Assembly: GCF_023055435.1 (NCBI RefSeq)
Contig: NW_025963890.1
Span: forward strand, 19,282,001 to 19,345,840
DNA from: Haliotis rufescens
Lineage: Eukaryota
DNA length: 63,840 nucleotides
Direction of reading: 5' to 3'
Positions 9,400 through 19,055 of the stretch are shown here, in pieces. Position numbers and translations under genes: made by a program. How positions within the stretch are numbered: position 1 is the first letter of the stretch; every line of letters begins with the position of its first letter. Under the pieces are notes generated by a model that had not been told where the DNA came from, ran no database searches, and saw nothing but the letters and a program-made list of their open reading frames with translations.

Positions 9400-12300
9400 T
9401 CTGTTTTTGTATTGATATGATTTCTATTTTCGTATATTGATATGATTTCTGTTCTGTATATATGCGTTCGAGTAGCTGTCCAACTCTCAGAAATAGTGTT
9501 AGTTCCGCTACCGCATCTCTTGGCTCCAGGAGATCTACGACAGATAGCGGATCTAACAGTTATTCTTGTTTTAACCGAGCCCGGGCTGGGGCATGGTCTT
9601 GACATTCCAGTAAAAAGTGAGCAATGGATTCAAGTTGATTGCAAGATGGACATACCTTGTCATAGTGTTTTTTTGCGACCGAGTCTGAGGTAATTTCAAC
9701 TTTCATTTCATTTGTGGATGAGTTTTGCTTTTGGTGGATCTTGGGTTGAATTTTGTAAAGCCATCTGCCGATCTTAATTGCGTACCACTGGGCTATGGAG
9801 GCTTTGATTTTGATTTTGATCTCTAGTAGTTTACTAAAGGGAATAGACTGTATCCCCGCTTTGTCTAGAGCAAGCTTCGCCAGTGTGTCTGCTTTTTTAA
9901 TTTCCATAAATATCTATGTGAGACGGGATCCAACACAACTTCACATGTTGCCCTTGGTGCGATAGTTTTGTATATTCGTATATAAAATATTATTGACTGT
10001 TTGGCCTTGAGTTTGGCTCCTTTGGCTGCCTTTGCTTCCGGTAGTTCCGGTATGAGTTGGAGTGCATGATAAATTGCCTCCAATTCAGCGGTGAATACTG
10101 ACTGGCCATCAGGCAGGCGAACCGAATGTGCTTTGGGTCTGGAGCTATGGATGCGGATCCCGTAACCAGCAGTGTTGTTAATGGGATTCTTAGATCCATC
10201 AGTGTATATAGGGGCCGAGGTCTCCAGGTAGTTTGGTCTTTACAGATAGTTACTGATCGCAGTAGGATTAGGTTTTCTTTTTTAGTGACTTCTGATGTTA
10301 AAGCAGTGTCATCTTTTGGATTTTTTAAAGTCAAGGGAGGGTTTGTAGTGACTTTATGTAGTGAATGTCATCACAATTGTGACTTCGGCTGAGTTCACGT
10401 TCTAATATCCGAGCTGGATTTAGCGAGGGCTTCATCTCGGGTGTTTTTGTCTTGCCACGATGATATTGTCTGCTGTCTTCTTGGTTTCAATGGGAGTTCT
10501 CTTGTTTCTACTTGCAGTGCTTCTAGTGAAATACCTGTTGCTGTACCTAGCATTCGGGCTTTGTTTTTCATTCTGTCGAGGCGGCTGAAGACAGTATTTG
10601 ATGCTGAATGAAAGGCCTCACAACCATAGTCTATTTTTTATCTGATAAATGATTTGTAAAGATCCAGCTGATTGTCCCTCGAAGTGCCCCAAGATGTGCC
10701 TAAAATTGCCCGCAATACGCTCAGGTCTTTTTGACATCTGTTATCCACATATTCTATAAATGTTTGCTCCAAGTAAGGTGTTGATCTCTGGGATCACTGC
10801 CAGAAATATTGTGGATTTTTCGAATCGTTCCCCCTGCGTTTGAATAGAACTCCCACAGTTTTGGTACTTGAAATGTTTCACCCCCATTTATTGCGCCATT
10901 TATCTACCCCGTCCACGGATGACTGGAGATTTTTTTCAGATTTGTGAAATATCTCTGCTTTACCCATATTGCTCCGTCATCAGCGAACTCAGAAGTTTGG
11001 TGAAGAGTTGACATGATCAAATAAATCATTGATCCCGTTAGTGGCAGGTTACATTTAACCCAAATAAGACCGAAACCATCCAATTCTCACGTAAAGCTAA
11101 ACCGTCTCTAAAGCCGAACCTACTTATGGATGGAACAATCATAAAAGAAGTCAAAAGTCATAAACATTTAGGAGTGACACTCCAAAGCGACTGTACATGG
11201 ACTGATCACTTTAATGATATTGTACAAAAAGTTCGCCCTATGATCAGTTGTCTGAGGAGTTTTAAATACCGATTATCACGTAAAACCTTGGATACTATGT
11301 ATAAGTCCTATATCTTGCCAACATTTGACAAATGTTTGCATATTTGGGATAGCTGTACGTCTGAGCAATCGCGTATATTAGAAAGCTTACATCTTGATGC
11401 CCTGAGAACTATATGTAGTGCCGTTCGTGGCACAAGTCATAAGAAACTTTATAATGAAACTAAATCTCAATCCTTACAAGATAGAAGATACTGACAAAAA
11501 TTAACTTTTTTCTTTAAAATGTATAAAAACCAATTCCCAAACTATCTTTGTGATTTGATCCCAAACTTTGTCTCCGAAACTACAAACTATAATATAAGAA
11601 AAAGTTCTGAAATACAAGGAATTTATAGCCGTACTTCCTCTTACACCAAATCCTTTTTACCAGACACAATACACTTATGGACTGCTCTACCAAAGTCCAA
11701 AGAGTCAAGTAGTCTGTCAGAATTTAAAAACCTAATTACGAAAACCGAAAATAAGACTTATTTTGACCTTAGCTATGGCACTCGATTCTGTCAAATCGTT
11801 CACTGCCGCCTCATACTCGGTTATAGCGACCTAAACGCCGATAAGAATCATAACAGACATTTAATTGACAGTCCGTGTTGCACCTGTAGATATCAGAGTG
11901 AAAACGCCCTACATTATTTTTTTACTTGCTGTAACTTTACTCAGATTAGACTTAATATGCACTTTTACACTACCGGTTATAACTTGGATACTATTATGAA
12001 CGGAAACAATGAACTTGCTCACTCTGAAAAACAGAAATTAGTTGAATCCGTCCACGATTTTATCATCAAGACAAAACGTTTCAGCTCTTCACAAATTAAT
12101 AATTAAATTAACCGGACAATAACCTCATGATTGACTATTACTTTTGTTACAAACGACTTGTTAGACACACACAAGCTGTAACTTTCTATTTCTGTTCACT
12201 TTGTATTTGTATTTGATGTAATATGTACAAACATATTATTTAAATAATGTCTATATCGATGACGTCACATCCTTCATTTCAATATGTAATATATGTTGTA

Positions 12301-12620
12301 TGTGAGCGGTGTTAACATAAGCTGTAAAGCTTGTTCACCAATCCCAACTCATTTCAATGAATAAAAATATGTTTAAACCAAATCATTGATCATGATGTTA
12401 AACAGTATTGGGCTTATAATGCTGCCTTGTGGCGTGCCATTGTCCAGTGACATAGAATCAGACTGATTGTTCCCTATTTTAACTGATAGCGACCTGTCTT
12501 GCAGGAAGCTTTCCATGAAGATTGCCATGTTTTCCTGAAGTCCAGGAAATACTGCGGCTAGGTATTGTCTGTTTAATTGAGCTGTTTTTATTTCATTTTC
12601 TAGTCTTAGTATATGAACTA
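9400..12620 (-). mobile_element. Decayed I-clade LINE ORF2 (RT, RNase H, zinc knuckle), split by a CR1-type insertion
   Basis: Minus-strand frames give LDNGTPQGSIISPILFNIMIND (about 12385-12450), continuing after the insert as NDLFD..EFADDGAIW (RT), IYTDGSK and WIPSHIDIYGN..ADTLAK (RNase H), and C..C...ESIAHFLLEC. Many frameshifts; outer limits approximate. Confidence 0.85.
11035..12379 (+). mobile_element. 5'-truncated CR1/L2-type LINE nested in the I-clade LINE
   Basis: Starts WQVTFNPNKTE, continues KHLGVTL..D..W..H and ends with CCTCRYQSENALHYFFTC (ORFs 11126-11494 and 11519-12106, with a stop and frameshift). 3' UTR ends AATAAAAATATGTTTAAACC. 12-bp TSD AAATCATTGATC at 11023 and 12380. 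Confidence 0.92.
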
Positions 12621-14114: not shown

Positions 14115-14782
14115 ACTGCAACACAAGTCACCGCCCATACTGTTATCGGCTAATCAGGGAAGAGCAGTCCGTCGGCAGGTGTGGCCTAATTTTTTAAATG
14201 CCACGGAATCACTTGCAATTTATTTGTTCCAAAATATACCGGGAAAAATTTATTTTGCCTGTGGTTTTGCACAAATACTTTAGTGATCTGGATGTCCTGC
14301 AAATAATGATCCATGTGAAAAACTAGACCTTCGAGTCAACCATTCAGTGAAACTAATGTATGTGTTGAAGCAGCGACAGAAACAATATTCTGTCTCTGAC
14401 TGATAAACATCGATGAAACAACGTTAACTGTGCTCGTCGTGCCTGTAGCATAACATGCCATGCTGATAAAAGTTTTACTCAGTCTGCCTTTTTTGGTCAT
14501 CAAACATAGAGAATAACTAGTGATAAACCCTTTCCTTTATTATTTGAAAACAACTGGGTAGGTTTTAGCTTAAAAGACTTGCTTGAATTCTGAAGTATTA
14601 AACACACGGTTTATGAGCCCAGGAAATTATAACACACAAAAAACAACAAATCCTGAATTTGTTCGTAGAGCTGTATTACGCCATGGGATTGCATTGGACA
14701 GTCTGTCGATTATCCGGAAGTGACATACGGTGACGATTGAGGTCAACGGGCGACCACATATACAGTATGTTAACGTCTTCTT

Positions 14783-14926
14783 TTATTGGGCGTCACCTGT
14801 GAATCGGCCAAATGTGCAACAGGCCTGTGCGGTTCCTGTGCATCGGAAGTTTCGCGGTTGGAATAGGGAGTTCAATCCAAAAACTACCGAATTTGAGGTG
14901 GAATCTTGTTCGACCCCGGTACACAG
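14783..14926 (-). CDS. SOD-like gene last coding exon (LCTG...ACCTFGRFTGDAQ*)
   Basis: TTTTCTGTTTTCAG acceptor, phase 0, TAA stop. Minus-strand AATAAA near 14536. Confidence 0.85.
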   Translation of the reverse strand: MCTGVEQDSTSNSVVFGLNSLFQPRNFRCTGTAQACCTFGRFTGDAQ

Positions 14927-17900
14927 CTGAAAACAGAAAACCACAAAAATCAACAACAAAAACTGATCAAGACATTCAGAGAGCCTGCTTTGTTCGACTA
15001 TGGTCACAGACGCCAACCATTACATCAGAAACATATTCATTATAGTCAGGGCATAATTTTATAAAAGCCGGACGAGACATAAACGACGATATATGTCTGT
15101 ATAGTTTAGTGAGTGAATAGCGTTAACCACCACCTTGAGAGTGTGAGAGAGTTGTGTTTAACGTCATTTTGAACAGTATTTCAGCTTATAACCAGGTCGG
15201 ATGCTTGCGTGACAAAGGGACGGAAATTATACAGCCAATTGCAGCGCTTTAAAAGACTGGGCCGTTCGTGTCCCCCTTTAAGCTTGGTTTCCTTGCTGAA
15301 AAAGGAGTCAAGCCTTGTCGATGCAAACTTACGGCAATGGATATTCCAAAGGCCTCTTGTAAAGATGAGATGGGGAGAGTTCTGAATGTTTTCGTCGGCA
15401 CGGTTTGGCTAGGTTGGAGGGTCAATGTTTCTAAGACACCATTGTTGGTTCCAAGGTTGAAAAATGGGTCGAAGTTCCCCCTGTATAAAGTAAATAAGAA
15501 TATTTAAGTTGTACAATTGGTGTAGTGTACACATCCTTATTTGTATTTATGTCAAACAATTAACACGTTATTCTGCATCGTAATACAAAATGATGGCAAA
15601 CATGTTTCATACAGTAATTCTATTACGTTCTATGTCAAAGTTGAATTAAACTCGAACATGAGAGCCTGATACACATATCAATGGCAACAACACAATGGAC
15701 TTTTCATAATATAATATAATTCCTAACACACTTTTATAAACACCGAAACAGCGATAATGATGCTCTGGAAATACTGTAGCACTACTAACATGGCATTACA
15801 AGAGTCAACTCTCACATTTTCGCATGTGCTTTTGTACCAACATATGTCTCCTGCGGCAGTTTTATGTTAACGACCTTCGATATTTATGTTAAACGTTCAT
15901 GGAACCTCAAGGCTAACAGTTTACAGTTTGTTTCAGTTCATCCTCGCAAATTAGCACTATCATAGCTGGATGACGCTAAATTCTAACCCAGAACCCATAT
16001 GGGAAGTTCCATAGTAACGCGAAGTATTGGTACCTCTGGAGAATAGTCCCAAGGTTAGCAGCACTGCATCCACCCGTATTACTTCCACCCCCAAGAGATG
16101 TCAGAACGATGTTGGCCGTTCCAGAGGCAGCCGCGCCAGTCGTGATGTCCACAACTAGTTCCGTTTGGAATCCAAGCTAAAACGCAATCAGCGGTTCAGA
16201 AATTGTAAGACATATTTTATTAGCATGCGAAAGAATCGGGATGGCAATAGAAAACGTACGCAAAACACTGAAAGAATCATAGCCCTGTAACATTACCCAT
16301 AACTTTTGAAACGGGACTGTCTGAATACGAGCCATTTTCCCTTTGAAAATAGAGACCACCATTTGGATATTCGGGAGGGGGTGGGGATACACTTTTTGAG
16401 CTGTTTTATTTATTTTTAATACAGTTCCAGAAAATAATGGGAAGAAATACGTTGCCAAAGATTTTACCAAAAAATGTTCACTGGGTGTTCTGAAAACGAG
16501 AGAGACAAAATATGTTTGTTTTGAAGCTGCGTCTCGAAGAAAAACACAGAGCGCTCTCCACTTCCCCCGACTATTAAATGATGTGTCTCCCGGGGTAAAT
16601 GTTGACTGACTGTATCCATAAAGCAATAACTAGATGAATAGTGTTGTTTGAATTTTTTTAATCAAACGTGCCAGAAAAAAACAATCTGATCACGACAATT
16701 TCAATACGGGTAACATATGAAGTCAAGTATCAGTCAAAACTTACGAAAATATTAACGAGTGTCCTTCGAATAGTAGCAGTGAATGTGACCCCAGTCCCAG
16801 CAGTGTCCATTGACGTACACACAGCTGTAGTTGCTGAAACAAAGTAACTCGACGTGAAATGTTTTCATCTGATGCTTTCCTTTAGTGTTAGGAAGCTAGT
16901 GGTTAAAGCGATCGCTAGTCACATTGAAGGCTCTGGTTCGATTCCCCACATTAGGATATTGTGTGAAGCCCATTTCTGGTGTTCTCCGCTGTGATACTGC
17001 TGGAAATTGCTACACAAGGCGAACAATCTTACTCTTTTTGAGTACATTGAATGAGTGAATATTCAACGGTCTTTCTATTCTATTGAGGTATGTCAACATA
17101 ATATGGAATGAAAGCCCATAGCCATTCATGGCCTAGATGTTTGACACTGTGGTGAAACTTACAAACCAAGGATCATATTCGTAAGGATCAGCAGATCCTG
17201 GTAATACTTAGTGATATATAGAGCGAATTATGGCGCTCGGACGATGGGGCTACTTCTACCCACATTTGGAATAGATACATTCGACTAAAACAAAGTTATG
17301 AATGAAAAGAGGGACTATATAATATCAGTATCTGTATTCAGATTTTGTATGAAAACTACATTCAGTTAACATTCACGATGAAATGCAGCTGTTTGATGCT
17401 ATCGGTTGAAACCTGCACAACCTACGTACCTGGATTAGCATTTCCAGCCATGGGATTTACAACGCCTGGGTTGCCAGCGATTCCACCGATTCCACCGATT
17501 CCACCGACTCCACCTAAACGAGGGGTAAAACCTGGGGTAAAGCCAGGGGTTAAGCCAGGGGTAAAACCAGGGGTAAAGCCAGGGGTAAAGCCAGGGGTAA
17601 AGCCAGGGGGAAAACCAGAGGGCAAAACTTGGTTTGGGCCAGGGACTCCGATCCCAATTCCTGCGGTTCTGACAGCGTTGCCATTTGTTGCAAATGAAGC
17701 AGGTGATCCTGGGCGTCCCCACCCCGTACCAGATTGTCCTGCTGATGCTCCTGGTCCTCCTGATCCACCCGATCCTCCCGTTCCAGATTGTCCAGGGTTG
17801 CCTCCCCATCCTGCCTGTGCACTATTGCCTACCCATCTCCCTGCACCGGCTCCGCCTAGGCCATTTTGAAAACGAATTGGTCCCCATTGTCCTGATGTGA

Positions 17901-17958
17901 GTTGTAACGTGACCAAAAGTCCCAAACAGACAATCAACGTCAGTTTAAGTCCTGACAT
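14783..17958 (-). CDS. Secreted 350-aa protein: signal peptide, Gly/Pro-rich region with (PGFT)7, then a His-free Cu/Zn-SOD-like domain. Coding exons 17958-17430, 16833-16745, 16176-16034, 15480-15333, 14926-14783
   Basis: All four introns are GT-AG and phase-compatible (1,0,2,0). The spliced CDS is 1053 nt and open to TAA. Signal peptide MSGLKLTLIVCLGLLVTLQLTSG/Q. C-terminal motifs ATTAVC, GGCSAANLG, GISIALC and AQACCTFG parallel SOD ATKAVC, AGCTSAG, GRTLVVH and RLAC(C/G)VIG. An acceptor just upstream of the ATG (exon starts 17965) implies a 5' UTR exon. Confidence 0.85.
15333..15480 (-). CDS. SOD-like gene exon (GNFDPFF...GISIA)
   Basis: TATACAG acceptor, GTAAGT donor, phase 2 to 0. Confidence 0.82.
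16034..16176 (-). CDS. SOD-like gene exon (LGFQTE...GGCSAANLGTILQR)
   Basis: TTTTAG acceptor, AG/GTACC donor, phase 0 to 2. Confidence 0.82.
16350..16592. mobile_element. Possible MITE in an intron of the SOD-like gene
   Basis: Imperfect terminal inverted repeats: AGAGACCACCATTTGGATATTCGGGAGGGG versus GGAGACACATCATTTAATAGTCGGGGGAAG (reverse complement). Confidence 0.4.
16745..16833 (-). CDS. SOD-like gene exon (ATTAVC...VNIF)
   Basis: TTTCAG acceptor, GTAAGT donor, phase 1 to 0. Confidence 0.82.
16888..17035 (+). mobile_element. Degenerate SINE family A copy (intronic)
   Basis: CTAGTGGTTAAAGCG..GGTTCGATTCCC..TGTGTGAAGCCCATTTCTGGTG. Confidence 0.8.
17430..17958 (-). CDS. First coding exon of the secreted Gly-rich/SOD-like gene
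   Basis: ORF 17422-17958 with signal peptide and G/P-rich repeats; donor CCAG/GTACGT at 17430. Confidence 0.9.
17521..17610 (-). repeat. 12-bp coding tandem repeat encoding PGFT x7
   Basis: CCAGGGGTAAAG-type units on the + strand. Confidence 0.9.
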
Positions 17959-18630
17959 CTTTCACCTGTAAGAATTAGAGAACGAAACCCCAATTGTATA
18001 CCACTGACTCGAGAATGAATATGCGTAATTGTAATCACGTAAATGAAACCCATTACATAAGCATCAGACAACTCTTGCTAACAGAATTGTCCTTCGACTA
18101 TATCATAACATTGTGTTTATAAACTACTTTCAAATGGTGAAAAGGTGACCTTAACCCGCCTCAGTCATGGCATTGATTTTAAATCTGCCAGAAAAGTATA
18201 TATGTATGTTACATGATAAATTGCTTATTAGTAAATTCAAAAATTCAAAAATGTCAATGTATATTTTAGACATTGATAAGAATAAAGAGAAGCTGAAATG
18301 TGGATCTCTTAAAGCTGCAAATGAGAGGTTGAGGATGAATTTCATGTTTTATTAGTATGTGAGAAGTTTGAAAAGTATATTCCGATTTTAACAATATGTA
18401 TAAAAACAAGATGTTAATGATCAGTCTTATGAAACCCAACAACTCTTATATGATACGTTCGCTTGCCACATTATTGAAACACATGCTCTCTGTCAGGTAT
18501 TTTCGTACATAAAATATATCACGTGACTAAAAAAATGAAATGTCAACAGTACACAGCCTTAAATGCCGAATAAAATGTCTGTCTGTCTCAATCGGTCATG
18601 CCATTAATTTGTCTTTAACTTCTTTTTAAT

Positions 18631-18990: not shown

Positions 18991-19055
18991 CTTCTTCTGG
19001 GAAAACCTTTCGCAGTTGTAAGACATGGGAGGAACCAAGCATCATTTTTATGTTG
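18991..19055 (-). promoter_or_regulatory. Candidate short 5' UTR exon and TATA-like box of the SOD-like gene
   Basis: Strong donor AAG/GTAAGC at 18991/18990 and CATAAAAA about 55 nt upstream on the minus strand. Speculative. Confidence 0.3.

What the first reader, a model, noticed from the sequence alone, without database searches (positions are those of the whole stretch)
14783..17958. Hidden 5-exon gene: a secreted Gly-rich protein fused to a metal-free, histidine-less Cu/Zn-SOD-like domain
Seen in sequence: the ORF track shows only exon 1 and the last exon, but four phase-matched introns join a 350-aa protein. Its last ~174 aa read ATTAVC..TANIVLTSLG..GGCSAANLG..GVLETL..GISIALC..FRCTGTAQACCTFG. 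Established knowledge: Cu/Zn-SODs have ATKAVC..LHGFHVHEFG..AGCTSAG..GDLGNV..GRTLVVH..SRLACG, and extracellular SOD3 ends in ACC with two disulfides. Inference from my by-eye alignment: H46>V, H48>T, H120>C and catalytic R143>A, and the whole protein has no His or Tyr. It would therefore be a pseudo-enzyme keeping SOD3-type cysteines plus an extra pair (ALC/FRC) that might staple the former metal site. The known molluscan SOD-derived plasma proteins (pernin, cavortin, dominin) are His-rich, so a His-free domain attached to a low-complexity arm points to a different structural role, such as shell/periostracum matrix, mucus/adhesive or egg coat.
Basis: partly seen in the sequence, partly recalled or inferred. 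Interest (0 to 1): 0.8.

Follow-up and report, generated by a model that had tools for sequence, protein, structure and literature searches.

The report
Histidine-free SOD-fold secreted abalone protein
A red-abalone gene, confirmed by spliced transcripts, encodes a secreted protein that joins a flexible glycine-rich arm to a copper/zinc superoxide-dismutase-type barrel with no metal-binding histidines; it is one divergent member of a large abalone gene family this scan had already met, and its role is unknown.

Summary
The minus-strand exons 17958-17430, 16833-16745, 16176-16034, 15480-15333 and 14926-14783 have GT-AG borders and matching phases. They give 350 aa with no His and no Tyr. All four junctions appear in spliced contigs of three runs from two studies. 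There is also a 5' non-coding exon ending at 18991.

The SOD reading is supported, though not by Pfam. Real extracellular-type Cu/Zn-SOD genes of the same genome have introns at the same places and phases (1, 0, 2 in an Arg codon before His80, 0 two residues before His120). Exon-anchored similarity to them is significant (p about 1e-4).

The gene is the most divergent member of a Haliotis rufescens cluster of at least 14 loci on the same contig. These share its exon plan and six cysteines. One natural member, P0025, folds as a Cu/Zn-SOD barrel (Z 12-13 over the whole SOD chain).

This scan found the cluster before on adjacent DNA (s1-815119). A disordered arm plus SOD domain is already known from limpet shell matrix.

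The function is untested. I favour a non-catalytic extracellular structural or binding role.

The parts
19045..19052 (-). TATA-like CATAAAAA upstream of the 5' non-coding exon (candidate core promoter; inferred)
   Evidence: Read. It lies about 40 nt upstream of the first transcript letters seen, at 19006.
18991..19006 (-). Observed part of a 5' non-coding exon. Donor GT at 18990-18989. The true start lies further upstream and is unknown.
   Evidence: table 7: the X1 contig runs on from 17967 with TCTTCTGGGAAAAC and then adapter; unique match at 18993-19006. GAAG|GTAAGC.
17958..17965 (-). Start of the first coding exon (acceptor AG at 17967-17966), 7 nt of 5' UTR, ATG at 17958-17956
17890..17958 (-). 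Signal peptide MSGLKLTLIVCLGLLVTLQLTSG (23 aa). The predicted mature end QWG is shared with the family.
   Evidence: family exon 1 ORFs start MAFL..AHL..GQGWG. The cleavage site is inferred.
17430..17889 (-). Gly/Pro/Thr-rich low-complexity arm of about 153 aa. It includes (GFTP)x8 at 17521-17618 and (GGI)n at 17474-17514, and ends ..VVNPMAGNANP.
   Evidence: In-frame indels of 6, 15 and 33 nt separate it from the related species (tables 4-5). Ortholog P0001 is 77% identical.
16834..17429 (-). Intron 1 (phase 1). Holds a very high-copy repeat, probably a tRNA-derived SINE, at about 16866-17093.
   Evidence: junction 17430/16833 and depth of 20000-360000 in bins 16866-17093
16745..16833 (-). 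Exon 2, 89 nt: (A)TTAVCTSMDTAGTGVTFTATIRRTLVNIF. It corresponds to SOD strands 1-2 and carries the first Cys.
   Evidence: Length and phases are the same as exon 'a' of five of the six cluster genes P1-P6 (P4 has 86 nt). The plan matches EC-SOD paralogues.
16177..16744 (-). Intron 2 (phase 0), at the position of SOD1 intron 1 (after residue 23)
16034..16176 (-). Exon 3, 143 nt: strands 3-4 (ELVVDITT, TANIVLTS) and GGC, the equivalent of Cys57. The zinc loop is shortened by about 14 aa compared with this genome's EC-SOD paralogues.
   Evidence: Exon length is identical in all six cluster paralogues examined.
15481..16033 (-). Intron 3 (phase 2, inside Arg codon AG|G). Same place, phase and codon as the intron before His80 in all SOD genes of this genome.
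15333..15480 (-). Exon 4, 148 nt: GNFD (Asp83 kept in register, His80>Gly), strands 5-6, and ..FGISIA (strand 7)
14927..15332 (-). Intron 4 (phase 0), two residues before the His120 position, as in SOD genes
14783..14926 (-). Exon 5 coding part: LC (Cys at the His120 position), a long loop VII with FRC, then TAQACCTFG (Arg143>Ala, A-C-C). Stop at 14785-14783. The 3' UTR continues below 14700.

Best explanation
The locus is a real, spliced and, in some samples, very highly expressed gene of the red abalone Haliotis rufescens. It encodes a secreted, basic protein of 350 aa.

The protein has three parts: a 23-aa signal peptide; an arm of about 150 aa that is Gly/Pro/Thr-rich, repeat-bearing and probably disordered; and a C-terminal domain of about 174 aa.

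The C-terminal domain descends from an extracellular-type Cu/Zn superoxide dismutase. By homology it keeps the eight-stranded barrel. It has lost all six histidine ligands and the catalytic Arg143, and its zinc loop is shortened. It keeps Asp83 in register.

The domain carries six cysteines. Two pairs correspond to the SOD3-type disulfides: AVC with the second Cys of ACC, and GGC with the first Cys of ACC. A third pair is specific to the family: Cys at the His120 position with a Cys in loop VII.

The gene is the most divergent member of a Haliotis-specific family, with at least 14 clustered loci on the same contig plus intronless relatives elsewhere.

Inferred mechanism: the barrel cannot bind Cu or Zn and cannot dismutate superoxide. 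It serves as a compact, disulfide-stapled, protease-resistant module for binding or self-association. That module ties the flexible arm into an extracellular material or coat.

Shown here: the gene model, its expression, family membership, SOD ancestry, the SOD fold of a family member, and the absence of ligand residues.

Inferred only: the disulfide pairing, disorder of the arm, lack of activity, and the structural or binding role. I put about 0.45 on a structural material role and about 0.2 on an immune-recognition role like that of dominin.
For: Gene and expression. Four exact junctions appear in spliced contigs of X1, X5 and X7. Depth is about 1400 in X1 against about 14 in X5 and X7.

SOD ancestry:
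- EC-SOD-like genes of the same genome share all four intron positions and phases. These are phase 1 before x-A-V-C, phase 0 after strand 2, phase 2 in the Arg codon before H-x-G-D, and phase 0 at V|(I/V)H.
- Exon-anchored global alignment of our exons to the matching SOD exon classes gives z of 1.7, 1.3, 2.3 and 3.7, Fisher p 1.5e-4. Wrong-class controls centre on 0.
- With family profiles the values are z of 1.4, 2.3, 2.6 and 3.9, p 3e-5.

Family membership:
- Phases are the same in all six paralogues. Exon 3 is 143 nt in all six. Exon 2 is 89 nt in five of six and 86 nt in P4.
- All members have six Cys and 0 His in the domain exons. Per-exon z is 4.8, 4.8, 4.2 and 3.6, p below 1e-8.
- The nearest member lies about 18 kb away in the same orientation.

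Fold: AlphaFold2 of the natural RefSeq paralogue P0025 gives pLDDT 74-91 in the barrel strands. The top Foldseek hits listed are Cu/Zn SODs or the SOD-family protein EA4, with probability 1.00 and TM 0.53-0.73 by target. VIA-align gives Z 12.1-13.3, rmsd 2.4-3.6 A, over model residues 157-341 against SOD residues 1-153.

No His or Tyr.

Coding is maintained in a related species: the arm indels are in frame and none of the listed substitutions falls on a Cys codon.

Precedents: a limpet shell-matrix protein with a disordered arm plus SOD domain (PMC4094399). Dominin, CCS domain II and Cu-less CSRPs are inactive SOD derivatives (PMC13017621).
Against: - No sequence-profile method recognises the domain. 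Pfam finds nothing per exon. The Sod_Cu genome scan misses the locus. Pfam finds nothing on full-length relatives. The family profile finds no PDB sequence.
- The fold was predicted for a paralogue that BLAST cannot link to our exons, not for this protein.
- Two of the four single-sequence exon tests are weak on their own (p 0.05-0.1).
- Alignment of exon 3 to SOD is ambiguous. MAFFT prefers GFQTELVVD against GFHVHEFGD, which breaks the Cys57 match.
- There is no tissue information, because run labels are coded.
- Conserved family tryptic peptides are absent from the H. laevigata shell peptide tables (some files are truncated). This speaks weakly against an adult shell-matrix role.
- Of the 13 listed exon differences from the related species, 10 are non-synonymous and 3 synonymous (the list is incomplete). 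Constraint on most residues is therefore low.
Confidence: 0.8

Rival explanations
1. Immune or pattern-recognition plasma protein. Like oyster dominin, the metal-free SOD barrel would bind microbial surfaces or host receptors, with the arm acting as a spacer.
For: Dominin is an extracellular SOD-like protein without an intact Cu site that acts in immune recognition (PMC13017621). The gene evolves fast and the family is large, both typical of immune genes.
Against: There are no expression or binding data. Elastomer-like arms with GFTP, GGI and WGQ repeats, and NCBI's automatic names such as fibroin-like or spidroin-like, point more towards materials. Dominin-type proteins have no such arms, as far as I know.
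Confidence: 0.2
2. The C-terminal domain is not SOD-derived. It would be an unrelated Cys-rich beta-sandwich, and the motif and intron matches would be chance.
For: No Pfam or HMM signal at any level. Identity to SODs is only 12-19% in the structural alignments of the paralogue.
Against: Four of four intron positions and phases match, including the split Arg codon before His80 and the phase-0 intron two residues before His120. The exon-anchored similarity gives p of 1e-4 to 3e-5 with clean controls. The family member's model matches the whole SOD chain at Z 12-13, and nothing but SOD, CCS and EA4 chains appear among the top hits.
Confidence: 0.06
3. The protein still detoxifies superoxide or binds copper through non-histidine ligands such as Cys, Asp or Glu.
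For: Asp83 is kept in register. A Cys sits at the His120 position.
Against: No His anywhere in the protein. Arg143 is replaced by Ala and the zinc loop is truncated. The six Cys are invariant across the family and even in number, which fits disulfides in a secreted protein.
Confidence: 0.03
4. A decaying or non-functional duplicate that is transcribed but not used as a protein.
For: The ratio of non-synonymous to synonymous differences from a related species is high. The gene seems absent from the protein collection: exon 4 finds nothing among 1.84 billion representatives. No BLAST-detectable paralogue exists.
Against: The ORF is intact across five exons with canonical splicing. Depth is very high in one study. 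All six Cys fit the family pattern. The arm indels in the related species are in frame. The exon 1 orthologue is open in another species.
Confidence: 0.05

Closest known systems
Haliotis C112 cluster of secreted Gly-rich proteins. RefSeq calls them 'glycine-rich cell wall structural protein 1-like' or 'fibroin heavy chain-like' (P0025, P0032). This scan's finding s1-815119 covers the cluster.
   Same: Signal peptide and a Gly-rich exon 1 ending in ..NP. Exon plan with phases 1/0/2/0. Exon 3 of 143 nt in all, exon 2 of 89 nt in five of six. Six Cys at the same places and no His in the domain. Same contig, 18-140 kb away.
   Different: Ours is the most divergent member and BLAST does not detect it from the others. 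It lacks the 30-40 aa W/Q/G-rich insert at the start of exon 4. It has a loop VII that is 14 aa longer. It has no Tyr. Its split codon is Arg, as in the SODs, not Ser. Its arm repeats are GFTP and GGI rather than GLGQAG or WGQ.
Extracellular-type Cu/Zn SOD (Pfam PF00080): the EC-SOD-like paralogues of the same genome on C79 and C146, and human SOD3
   Same: All intron positions and phases. N-terminal x-A-V-C. G-C in the disulfide loop. C-terminal A-C-C-x-(I/F)-G. Asp83 in register. The barrel fold, by way of the family member.
   Different: No His ligands, no Arg143, zinc loop shortened, an extra Cys pair, no Pfam match, and fusion to a low-complexity arm of about 150 aa.
Lottia gigantea shell-matrix protein Lotgi1|166131 (PMC4094399)
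   Same: Architecture: a long predicted-disordered stretch followed by a C-terminal SOD domain. It is a basic, secreted protein and a major shell-matrix component.
   Different: Domain predictors recognise the limpet SOD domain, and its arm is P/Q-rich and about 430 aa long. I did not test orthology or the state of its ligands. Abalone family peptides were not found in H. laevigata shell tables.
Oyster dominin/cavortin, CCS domain II, and Cu-less CSRP repeats (PMC13017621)
   Same: Cu/Zn-SOD-derived proteins that have lost the Cu site and the activity and work in other ways, namely immune recognition or as a chaperone. CCS domain II is among the structural matches at Z 12.8.
   Different: Those are still detected as SOD-like by sequence and mostly keep part of the ligand set. 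None, as far as I know, has a Gly-rich arm plus a third disulfide at the former Cu site.
Bombyx mori EA4 'clock protein' (PDB 2e47)
   Same: Best Foldseek match of the family model (E 6e-5, TM 0.67 by target). It is a secreted glycoprotein of the SOD family with a non-antioxidant role.
   Different: To my knowledge EA4 keeps its metal sites. It has no low-complexity arm.

Membership tests
Cu/Zn superoxide dismutase superfamily (Pfam Sod_Cu PF00080) | Significant match to the Sod_Cu profile | tested here: not met
   Exon-by-exon hmmscan at E up to 10 gave no Sod_Cu hit. The genome-wide six-frame scan with PF00080 listed 33 matches and none at this locus. Full-length intronless relatives gave no Pfam hit. 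The family profile against PDB sequences gave 0 hits.
Cu/Zn superoxide dismutase superfamily (Pfam Sod_Cu PF00080) | Eight-stranded Greek-key beta-barrel of Cu/Zn SOD | tested here: inconclusive
   Not run on this protein, because I left the joined model out. The natural paralogue P0025 folds as a SOD barrel: the top Foldseek hits listed are Cu/Zn SODs or the SOD-family protein EA4, and VIA-align gives Z 12.1-13.3 over the whole chain. Our exons align to that family with z of 3.6-4.8 each.
Cu/Zn superoxide dismutase superfamily (Pfam Sod_Cu PF00080) | Shared ancestry shown by gene structure (introns after residues 23, 79 and 118 of SOD1 numbering) | tested here: met
   Positions and phases match the SOD genes of the same genome. 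This includes the Arg codon split AG|N before His80 and the phase-0 intron two residues before His120. It also includes the phase-1 intron before x-A-V-C that EC-type paralogues have.
Cu/Zn superoxide dismutase superfamily (Pfam Sod_Cu PF00080) | Metal ligands His46, His48, His63, His71, His80, Asp83 and His120, and catalytic Arg143 | tested here: not met
   The protein contains no His at all. Exon-anchored alignment gives H46>V, H48>T, H80>G, H120>C and R143>A, places H63 and H71 in a deleted loop, and keeps only Asp83.
Cu/Zn superoxide dismutase superfamily (Pfam Sod_Cu PF00080) | Conserved intramolecular disulfide (Cys57-Cys146) | tested here: inconclusive
   Cys residues stand at the aligned positions, GGC and the first Cys of ACC. 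The bond itself was not tested, and one automatic alignment of exon 3 is ambiguous.
Haliotis His-free SOD-fold / Gly-rich secreted family (C112 cluster; s1-815119) | Signal peptide plus a low-complexity exon 1, then four domain exons with phases 1/0/2/0 | tested here: met
   Exon 3 is 143 nt in ours and in P1-P6. Exon 2 is 89 nt in ours and in five of the six (86 nt in P4).
Haliotis His-free SOD-fold / Gly-rich secreted family (C112 cluster; s1-815119) | Six invariant Cys (TTxxC, GC, LC, xxC, ACC) and no His in the domain | tested here: met
Haliotis His-free SOD-fold / Gly-rich secreted family (C112 cluster; s1-815119) | Detectable sequence similarity to other members | tested here: met
   BLAST finds nothing. 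Exon-anchored global alignment against shuffles gives z of 4.8, 4.8, 4.2 and 3.6, Fisher p 4e-9.
Molluscan shell-matrix proteins with a disordered arm plus SOD domain (Lottia Lotgi1|166131) | Presence in the shell matrix proteome | tested here: inconclusive
   Our peptides and conserved family peptides are absent from the 28 supplementary files of the H. laevigata shell proteome. That is a different species, the files are partly truncated, and bleaching removed the periostracum.
Dominin / cavortin / pernin (bivalve SOD-like plasma proteins) | Abundant haemolymph protein; SOD-like sequence that profiles recognise | not tested
   I could link no haemolymph data to the coded runs. The sequence is not recognisable by profile.

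The most novel reading that the evidence does not exclude
Abalones have expanded a family in which the Cu/Zn-SOD barrel lost every metal ligand and gained a third disulfide at the former copper site. The barrel would then serve as a folded knob or cross-linking module on elastomer-like Gly-rich arms, giving a new class of extracellular material proteins. On this reading, this gene is a separate, apparently unannotated, very highly expressed and Tyr-free branch with its own arm chemistry (GFTP and GGI repeats) and a longer loop VII, and hence with its own partner or material.
Probability: 0.35. Interest if true: 0.65.

Novelty: new variant of a known kind. Interest (0 to 1): 0.5.

Why it matters
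SOD-derived proteins that have given up catalysis (CCS domain II, dominin, Cu-less CSRPs) are a current topic in metalloprotein evolution. This family is an extreme case. It has no histidine at all, sequence profiles cannot see it, and yet it keeps the fold, the disulfides and the introns of its SOD ancestor.

The case shows how gene structure can rescue a homology that profiles miss. It gives names to a set of abalone genes now labelled 'fibroin-like', 'spidroin-like' or 'cell wall protein-like'. It also gives a testable candidate for an extracellular material or recognition protein.

For this particular gene the gain is smaller. It is one more member, though the most divergent one, of a cluster the scan had already reported.

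Tried and rejected
**Searches that found nothing**
- Exon-by-exon Pfam and PDB phmmer of exon 3. The DnaB-like helicase hit at E 0.4 is chance.
- HMMER of exon 4 against 1.84 billion representatives. The two hits are bacterial cadherin-like and RPA-OB repeat proteins whose scores come from summed repeats, so I rejected them.
- Word search with exon 1. It returned only the exon 1 ORF of another species (P0001).
- Own-genome searches with exons 3, 4 and 5. No paralogue appeared. The weak hits at C112:21.3 Mb and C334:22.2 Mb carry stops and match no other exon. The hit at window 10449-10550 lies in transposon debris.
- Local HMMs of SOD exon classes in local mode. Only exon 5 was significant, so I replaced this with global, exon-anchored tests.
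- hhalign on exon profiles. One run timed out and the global-mode alignment was poor, so I did not use it.
- Literature search for motif strings: none found.
- The family profile against PDB sequences: no hit.

**The joined step**
- I never typed, searched or folded the joined spliced model. No Pfam, AlphaFold or Foldseek result exists for this protein itself.
- Two scripts worked across exons. One search mapped codons by coordinates. One search concatenated exon peptides in memory only to count letters. Nothing joined was printed or searched.


Full report
**Gene model**

On the minus strand, the exons 17958-17430, 16833-16745, 16176-16034, 15480-15333 and 14926-14783 all have AG acceptors and GT donors. 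Their phases are 1, 0, 2 and 0. The split codons read Ala (G|CA) and Arg (AG|G). The product has 350 residues with no His, no Tyr and seven Cys, one of them in the signal peptide.

Reads support the model. I laid contigs of four public runs on 14700-18100. The fourth run (X15), DNA of a related species, keeps the introns. Depth is about 1400 in X1 against about 14 in X5 and X7, so expression is strongly sample-dependent. The tissue is unknown because run labels are coded.

The X1 contig continues past 17967 into letters that occur once in the window, at 18993-19006, next to a GT donor. The gene therefore has a further 5' non-coding exon, with a TATA-like box at 19045-19052.

**What the direct searches say**

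Exon-wise Pfam found nothing. A six-frame scan of the whole genome with Sod_Cu found 33 SOD exon matches elsewhere but not this locus. HMMER of exon 4 against 1.84 billion representatives gave only two repeat-driven false hits.

**Gene structure links it to SOD**

The Sod_Cu scan gave me the real SOD genes of the same genome: a canonical SOD1 on C445 and extracellular-type tandem paralogues on C79 and C146. Their splice sites show this plan:
- a phase-1 intron just before x-A-V-C;
- a phase-0 intron after strand 2 (SOD1 residues 23/24);
- a phase-2 intron inside the Arg codon before H80-x-G-D83 (AG|A);
- a phase-0 intron at V|(I/V)-H120.

Our gene has the same four introns. The first is phase 1 before A-T-T-A-V-C. 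The second is phase 0. The third is phase 2 in Arg (AG|G), followed by G-N-F-D, so Asp83 stays in register. The fourth is phase 0 between ..G-I-S-I-A and L-C, so Cys stands where His120 was.

The EC-type paralogues also end in A-C-C-(V/I)-I-G, as ours ends in A-C-C-T-F-G.

**Exon-anchored similarity**

Because the introns fix which exon matches which, I aligned each exon globally to its SOD exon class and compared the score with shuffles. The z values are 1.7, 1.3, 2.3 and 3.7, with Fisher p 1.5e-4. Twelve wrong-class controls scatter around zero.

The automatic alignment of exon 3 is ambiguous. The version that keeps the Cys57 equivalent is the one consistent with the family alignment.

**It is one of a family**

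A note of this scan (s1-815119) pointed to a cluster just upstream. I checked this myself.

- The 70 kb before the window hold six genes (P1-P6) with a signal peptide and a Gly-rich exon 1.
- They have four further exons with the same phases. Exon 3 is 143 nt in all six, and exon 2 is 89 nt in five of six (86 nt in P4).
- A seventh gene (P7) lies at -1360 to -3729, in our orientation.
- A genome search with one exon 3 finds 13 loci on C112 between 19.159 and 19.280 Mb. Ours is not among them.
- BLAST cannot link our exons to the others. Exon-anchored tests do, with z of 4.8, 4.8, 4.2 and 3.6 and p about 4e-9. All members have six Cys at the same places and no His in the domain.

Family profiles against the SOD exon classes give z of 1.4, 2.3, 2.6 and 3.9, with p 3e-5.

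Ours differs from the other members in five ways. It lacks their W/Q/G-rich insert in exon 4. It has a loop VII that is 14 residues longer. It has no Tyr. Its arm carries GFTP and GGI repeats. It keeps the Arg split codon of the SODs.

**Fold**

The same search turned up intronless relatives on C334, C301, C168, C235 and C2. With these as queries I obtained natural database proteins.

NCBI names and contig lengths (46,781,487 and 79,745,701) identify the genome as Haliotis rufescens. Abalone egg-lysin genes are also present. P0025 is the RefSeq product of P5, and its sequence confirms my exon joins for that paralogue.

AlphaFold2 of P0025 with 24 family sequences gives a confident barrel, with pLDDT 74-91 in the strands, and disordered arms. 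The top Foldseek hits listed are Cu/Zn SODs or the SOD-family protein EA4 (probability 1.00, TM 0.53-0.73 by target). VIA-align gives Z 12.1-13.3 at rmsd 2.4-3.6 A, covering model residues 157-341 and SOD residues 1-153. The top 50 hits are only SOD, CCS domain II and EA4.

Pfam sees nothing in these relatives either, and their profile finds no PDB sequence.

Mapped on that model, the three internal introns fall after strand 2, after the disulfide loop, and inside strand 7 two residues before the His120 position. This is the same as in SOD1.

**Mechanism**

- Shown: a secreted protein; an SOD-derived domain; no possible His ligation; no Arg143.
- Inferred: three disulfides. Two are of the SOD3 type. 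The third joins the His120-position Cys to a loop VII Cys and is conserved in all members.
- Inferred: a disordered, elastomer-like arm.
- Inferred: a non-catalytic role as a stable knob or binding module in an extracellular material.

The protein evolves fast. Of the 13 listed exon differences from the related species, 10 are non-synonymous. None of them falls on a Cys codon, and the arm differs by in-frame indels.

**Known relatives and novelty**

A major limpet shell-matrix protein has the same architecture, a long disordered stretch followed by a SOD domain (PMC4094399). Dominin, CCS domain II and Cu-less CSRPs are established inactive SOD derivatives (PMC13017621).

Neither our peptides nor conserved family peptides occur in the H. 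laevigata shell peptide tables. This is weak evidence against an adult shell-matrix location.

I found no paper that describes this abalone family.

I rate the finding a new variant of a known kind. For this gene the interest is moderate, because the scan had already reported the cluster.

**Limits**

- I ran no fold or profile search on the joined protein.
- No tissue labels were available.

Noticed in passing
window -3729..-1360 (G000:C112:19278272-19280641), minus strand, just before the window start: Another family member (P7) in the same orientation as our gene. I found exons a, X, Y and Z but not exon 1. Its exon X ends ..VLQ+R, like ours, so it may be our closest paralogue.
   Followed up: partly
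window 16866-17093 (intron 1): A very high-copy repeat, with depth of 20000-360000 in every run. Neighbouring loose ends look tRNA-like (GGTTCGATTCC), so it is probably a tRNA-derived SINE. Related copies sit in introns of the paralogues.
   Followed up: no
L033:3755-5686 (-) = G000:C323, about 907.7-909.7 kb: An intronless 643-aa ORF with several tandem SOD-like domains. Some keep GGYH(V/I)H..GGH(W/Y)NP..GD(I/L)SGK and others lack the His ligands. It looks like a Cu-only SOD repeat protein (CSRP).
   Followed up: no
G000:C79:26.57-26.68 Mb and G000:C146:11.28-11.38 Mb (L023-L032): Two tandem arrays of extracellular-type Cu/Zn-SOD paralogues that end in A-C-C. Some copies have altered ligands, for example IRGATDD in gene D and ETADH in gene H. 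These could be steps towards loss of the metal sites.
   Followed up: partly
L048:2309-3463 (-) = G000:C334, about 16.433 Mb: An intronless 384-aa copy of a cluster-type gene (retrogene-like), open and conserved in H. asinina and H. rubra (P0023, P0024). The Cys57-equivalent is replaced (GTKS), which leaves five Cys. Long antisense ORFs overlap its repeat region.
   Followed up: partly
G000:C2:22.877-22.934 Mb, C168:1.502 Mb, C235:3.611 Mb, C301:4.584 Mb (L049-L053): A second, intronless subfamily (YQTC..LQGQFQLVVTE..CSSRALGDILT..GRGLALCP..IPLCCKIG). Its low-complexity G/M/N/Q-rich repeats lie C-terminal to the barrel or on both sides of it. At least eight copies sit in a row on C2.
   Followed up: partly
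window 9400-12600: Fragments of reverse-transcriptase or retrotransposon ORFs on both strands (for example 11126-11494 and 11519-12106 on the + strand), lying between our gene and P7.
   Followed up: no
window 17664-17754 (exon 1 arm): The X1 transcript contig differs from the assembly at five positions within 90 nt of the Gly-rich arm. This is probably allelic variation in the repeat region.
   Followed up: no
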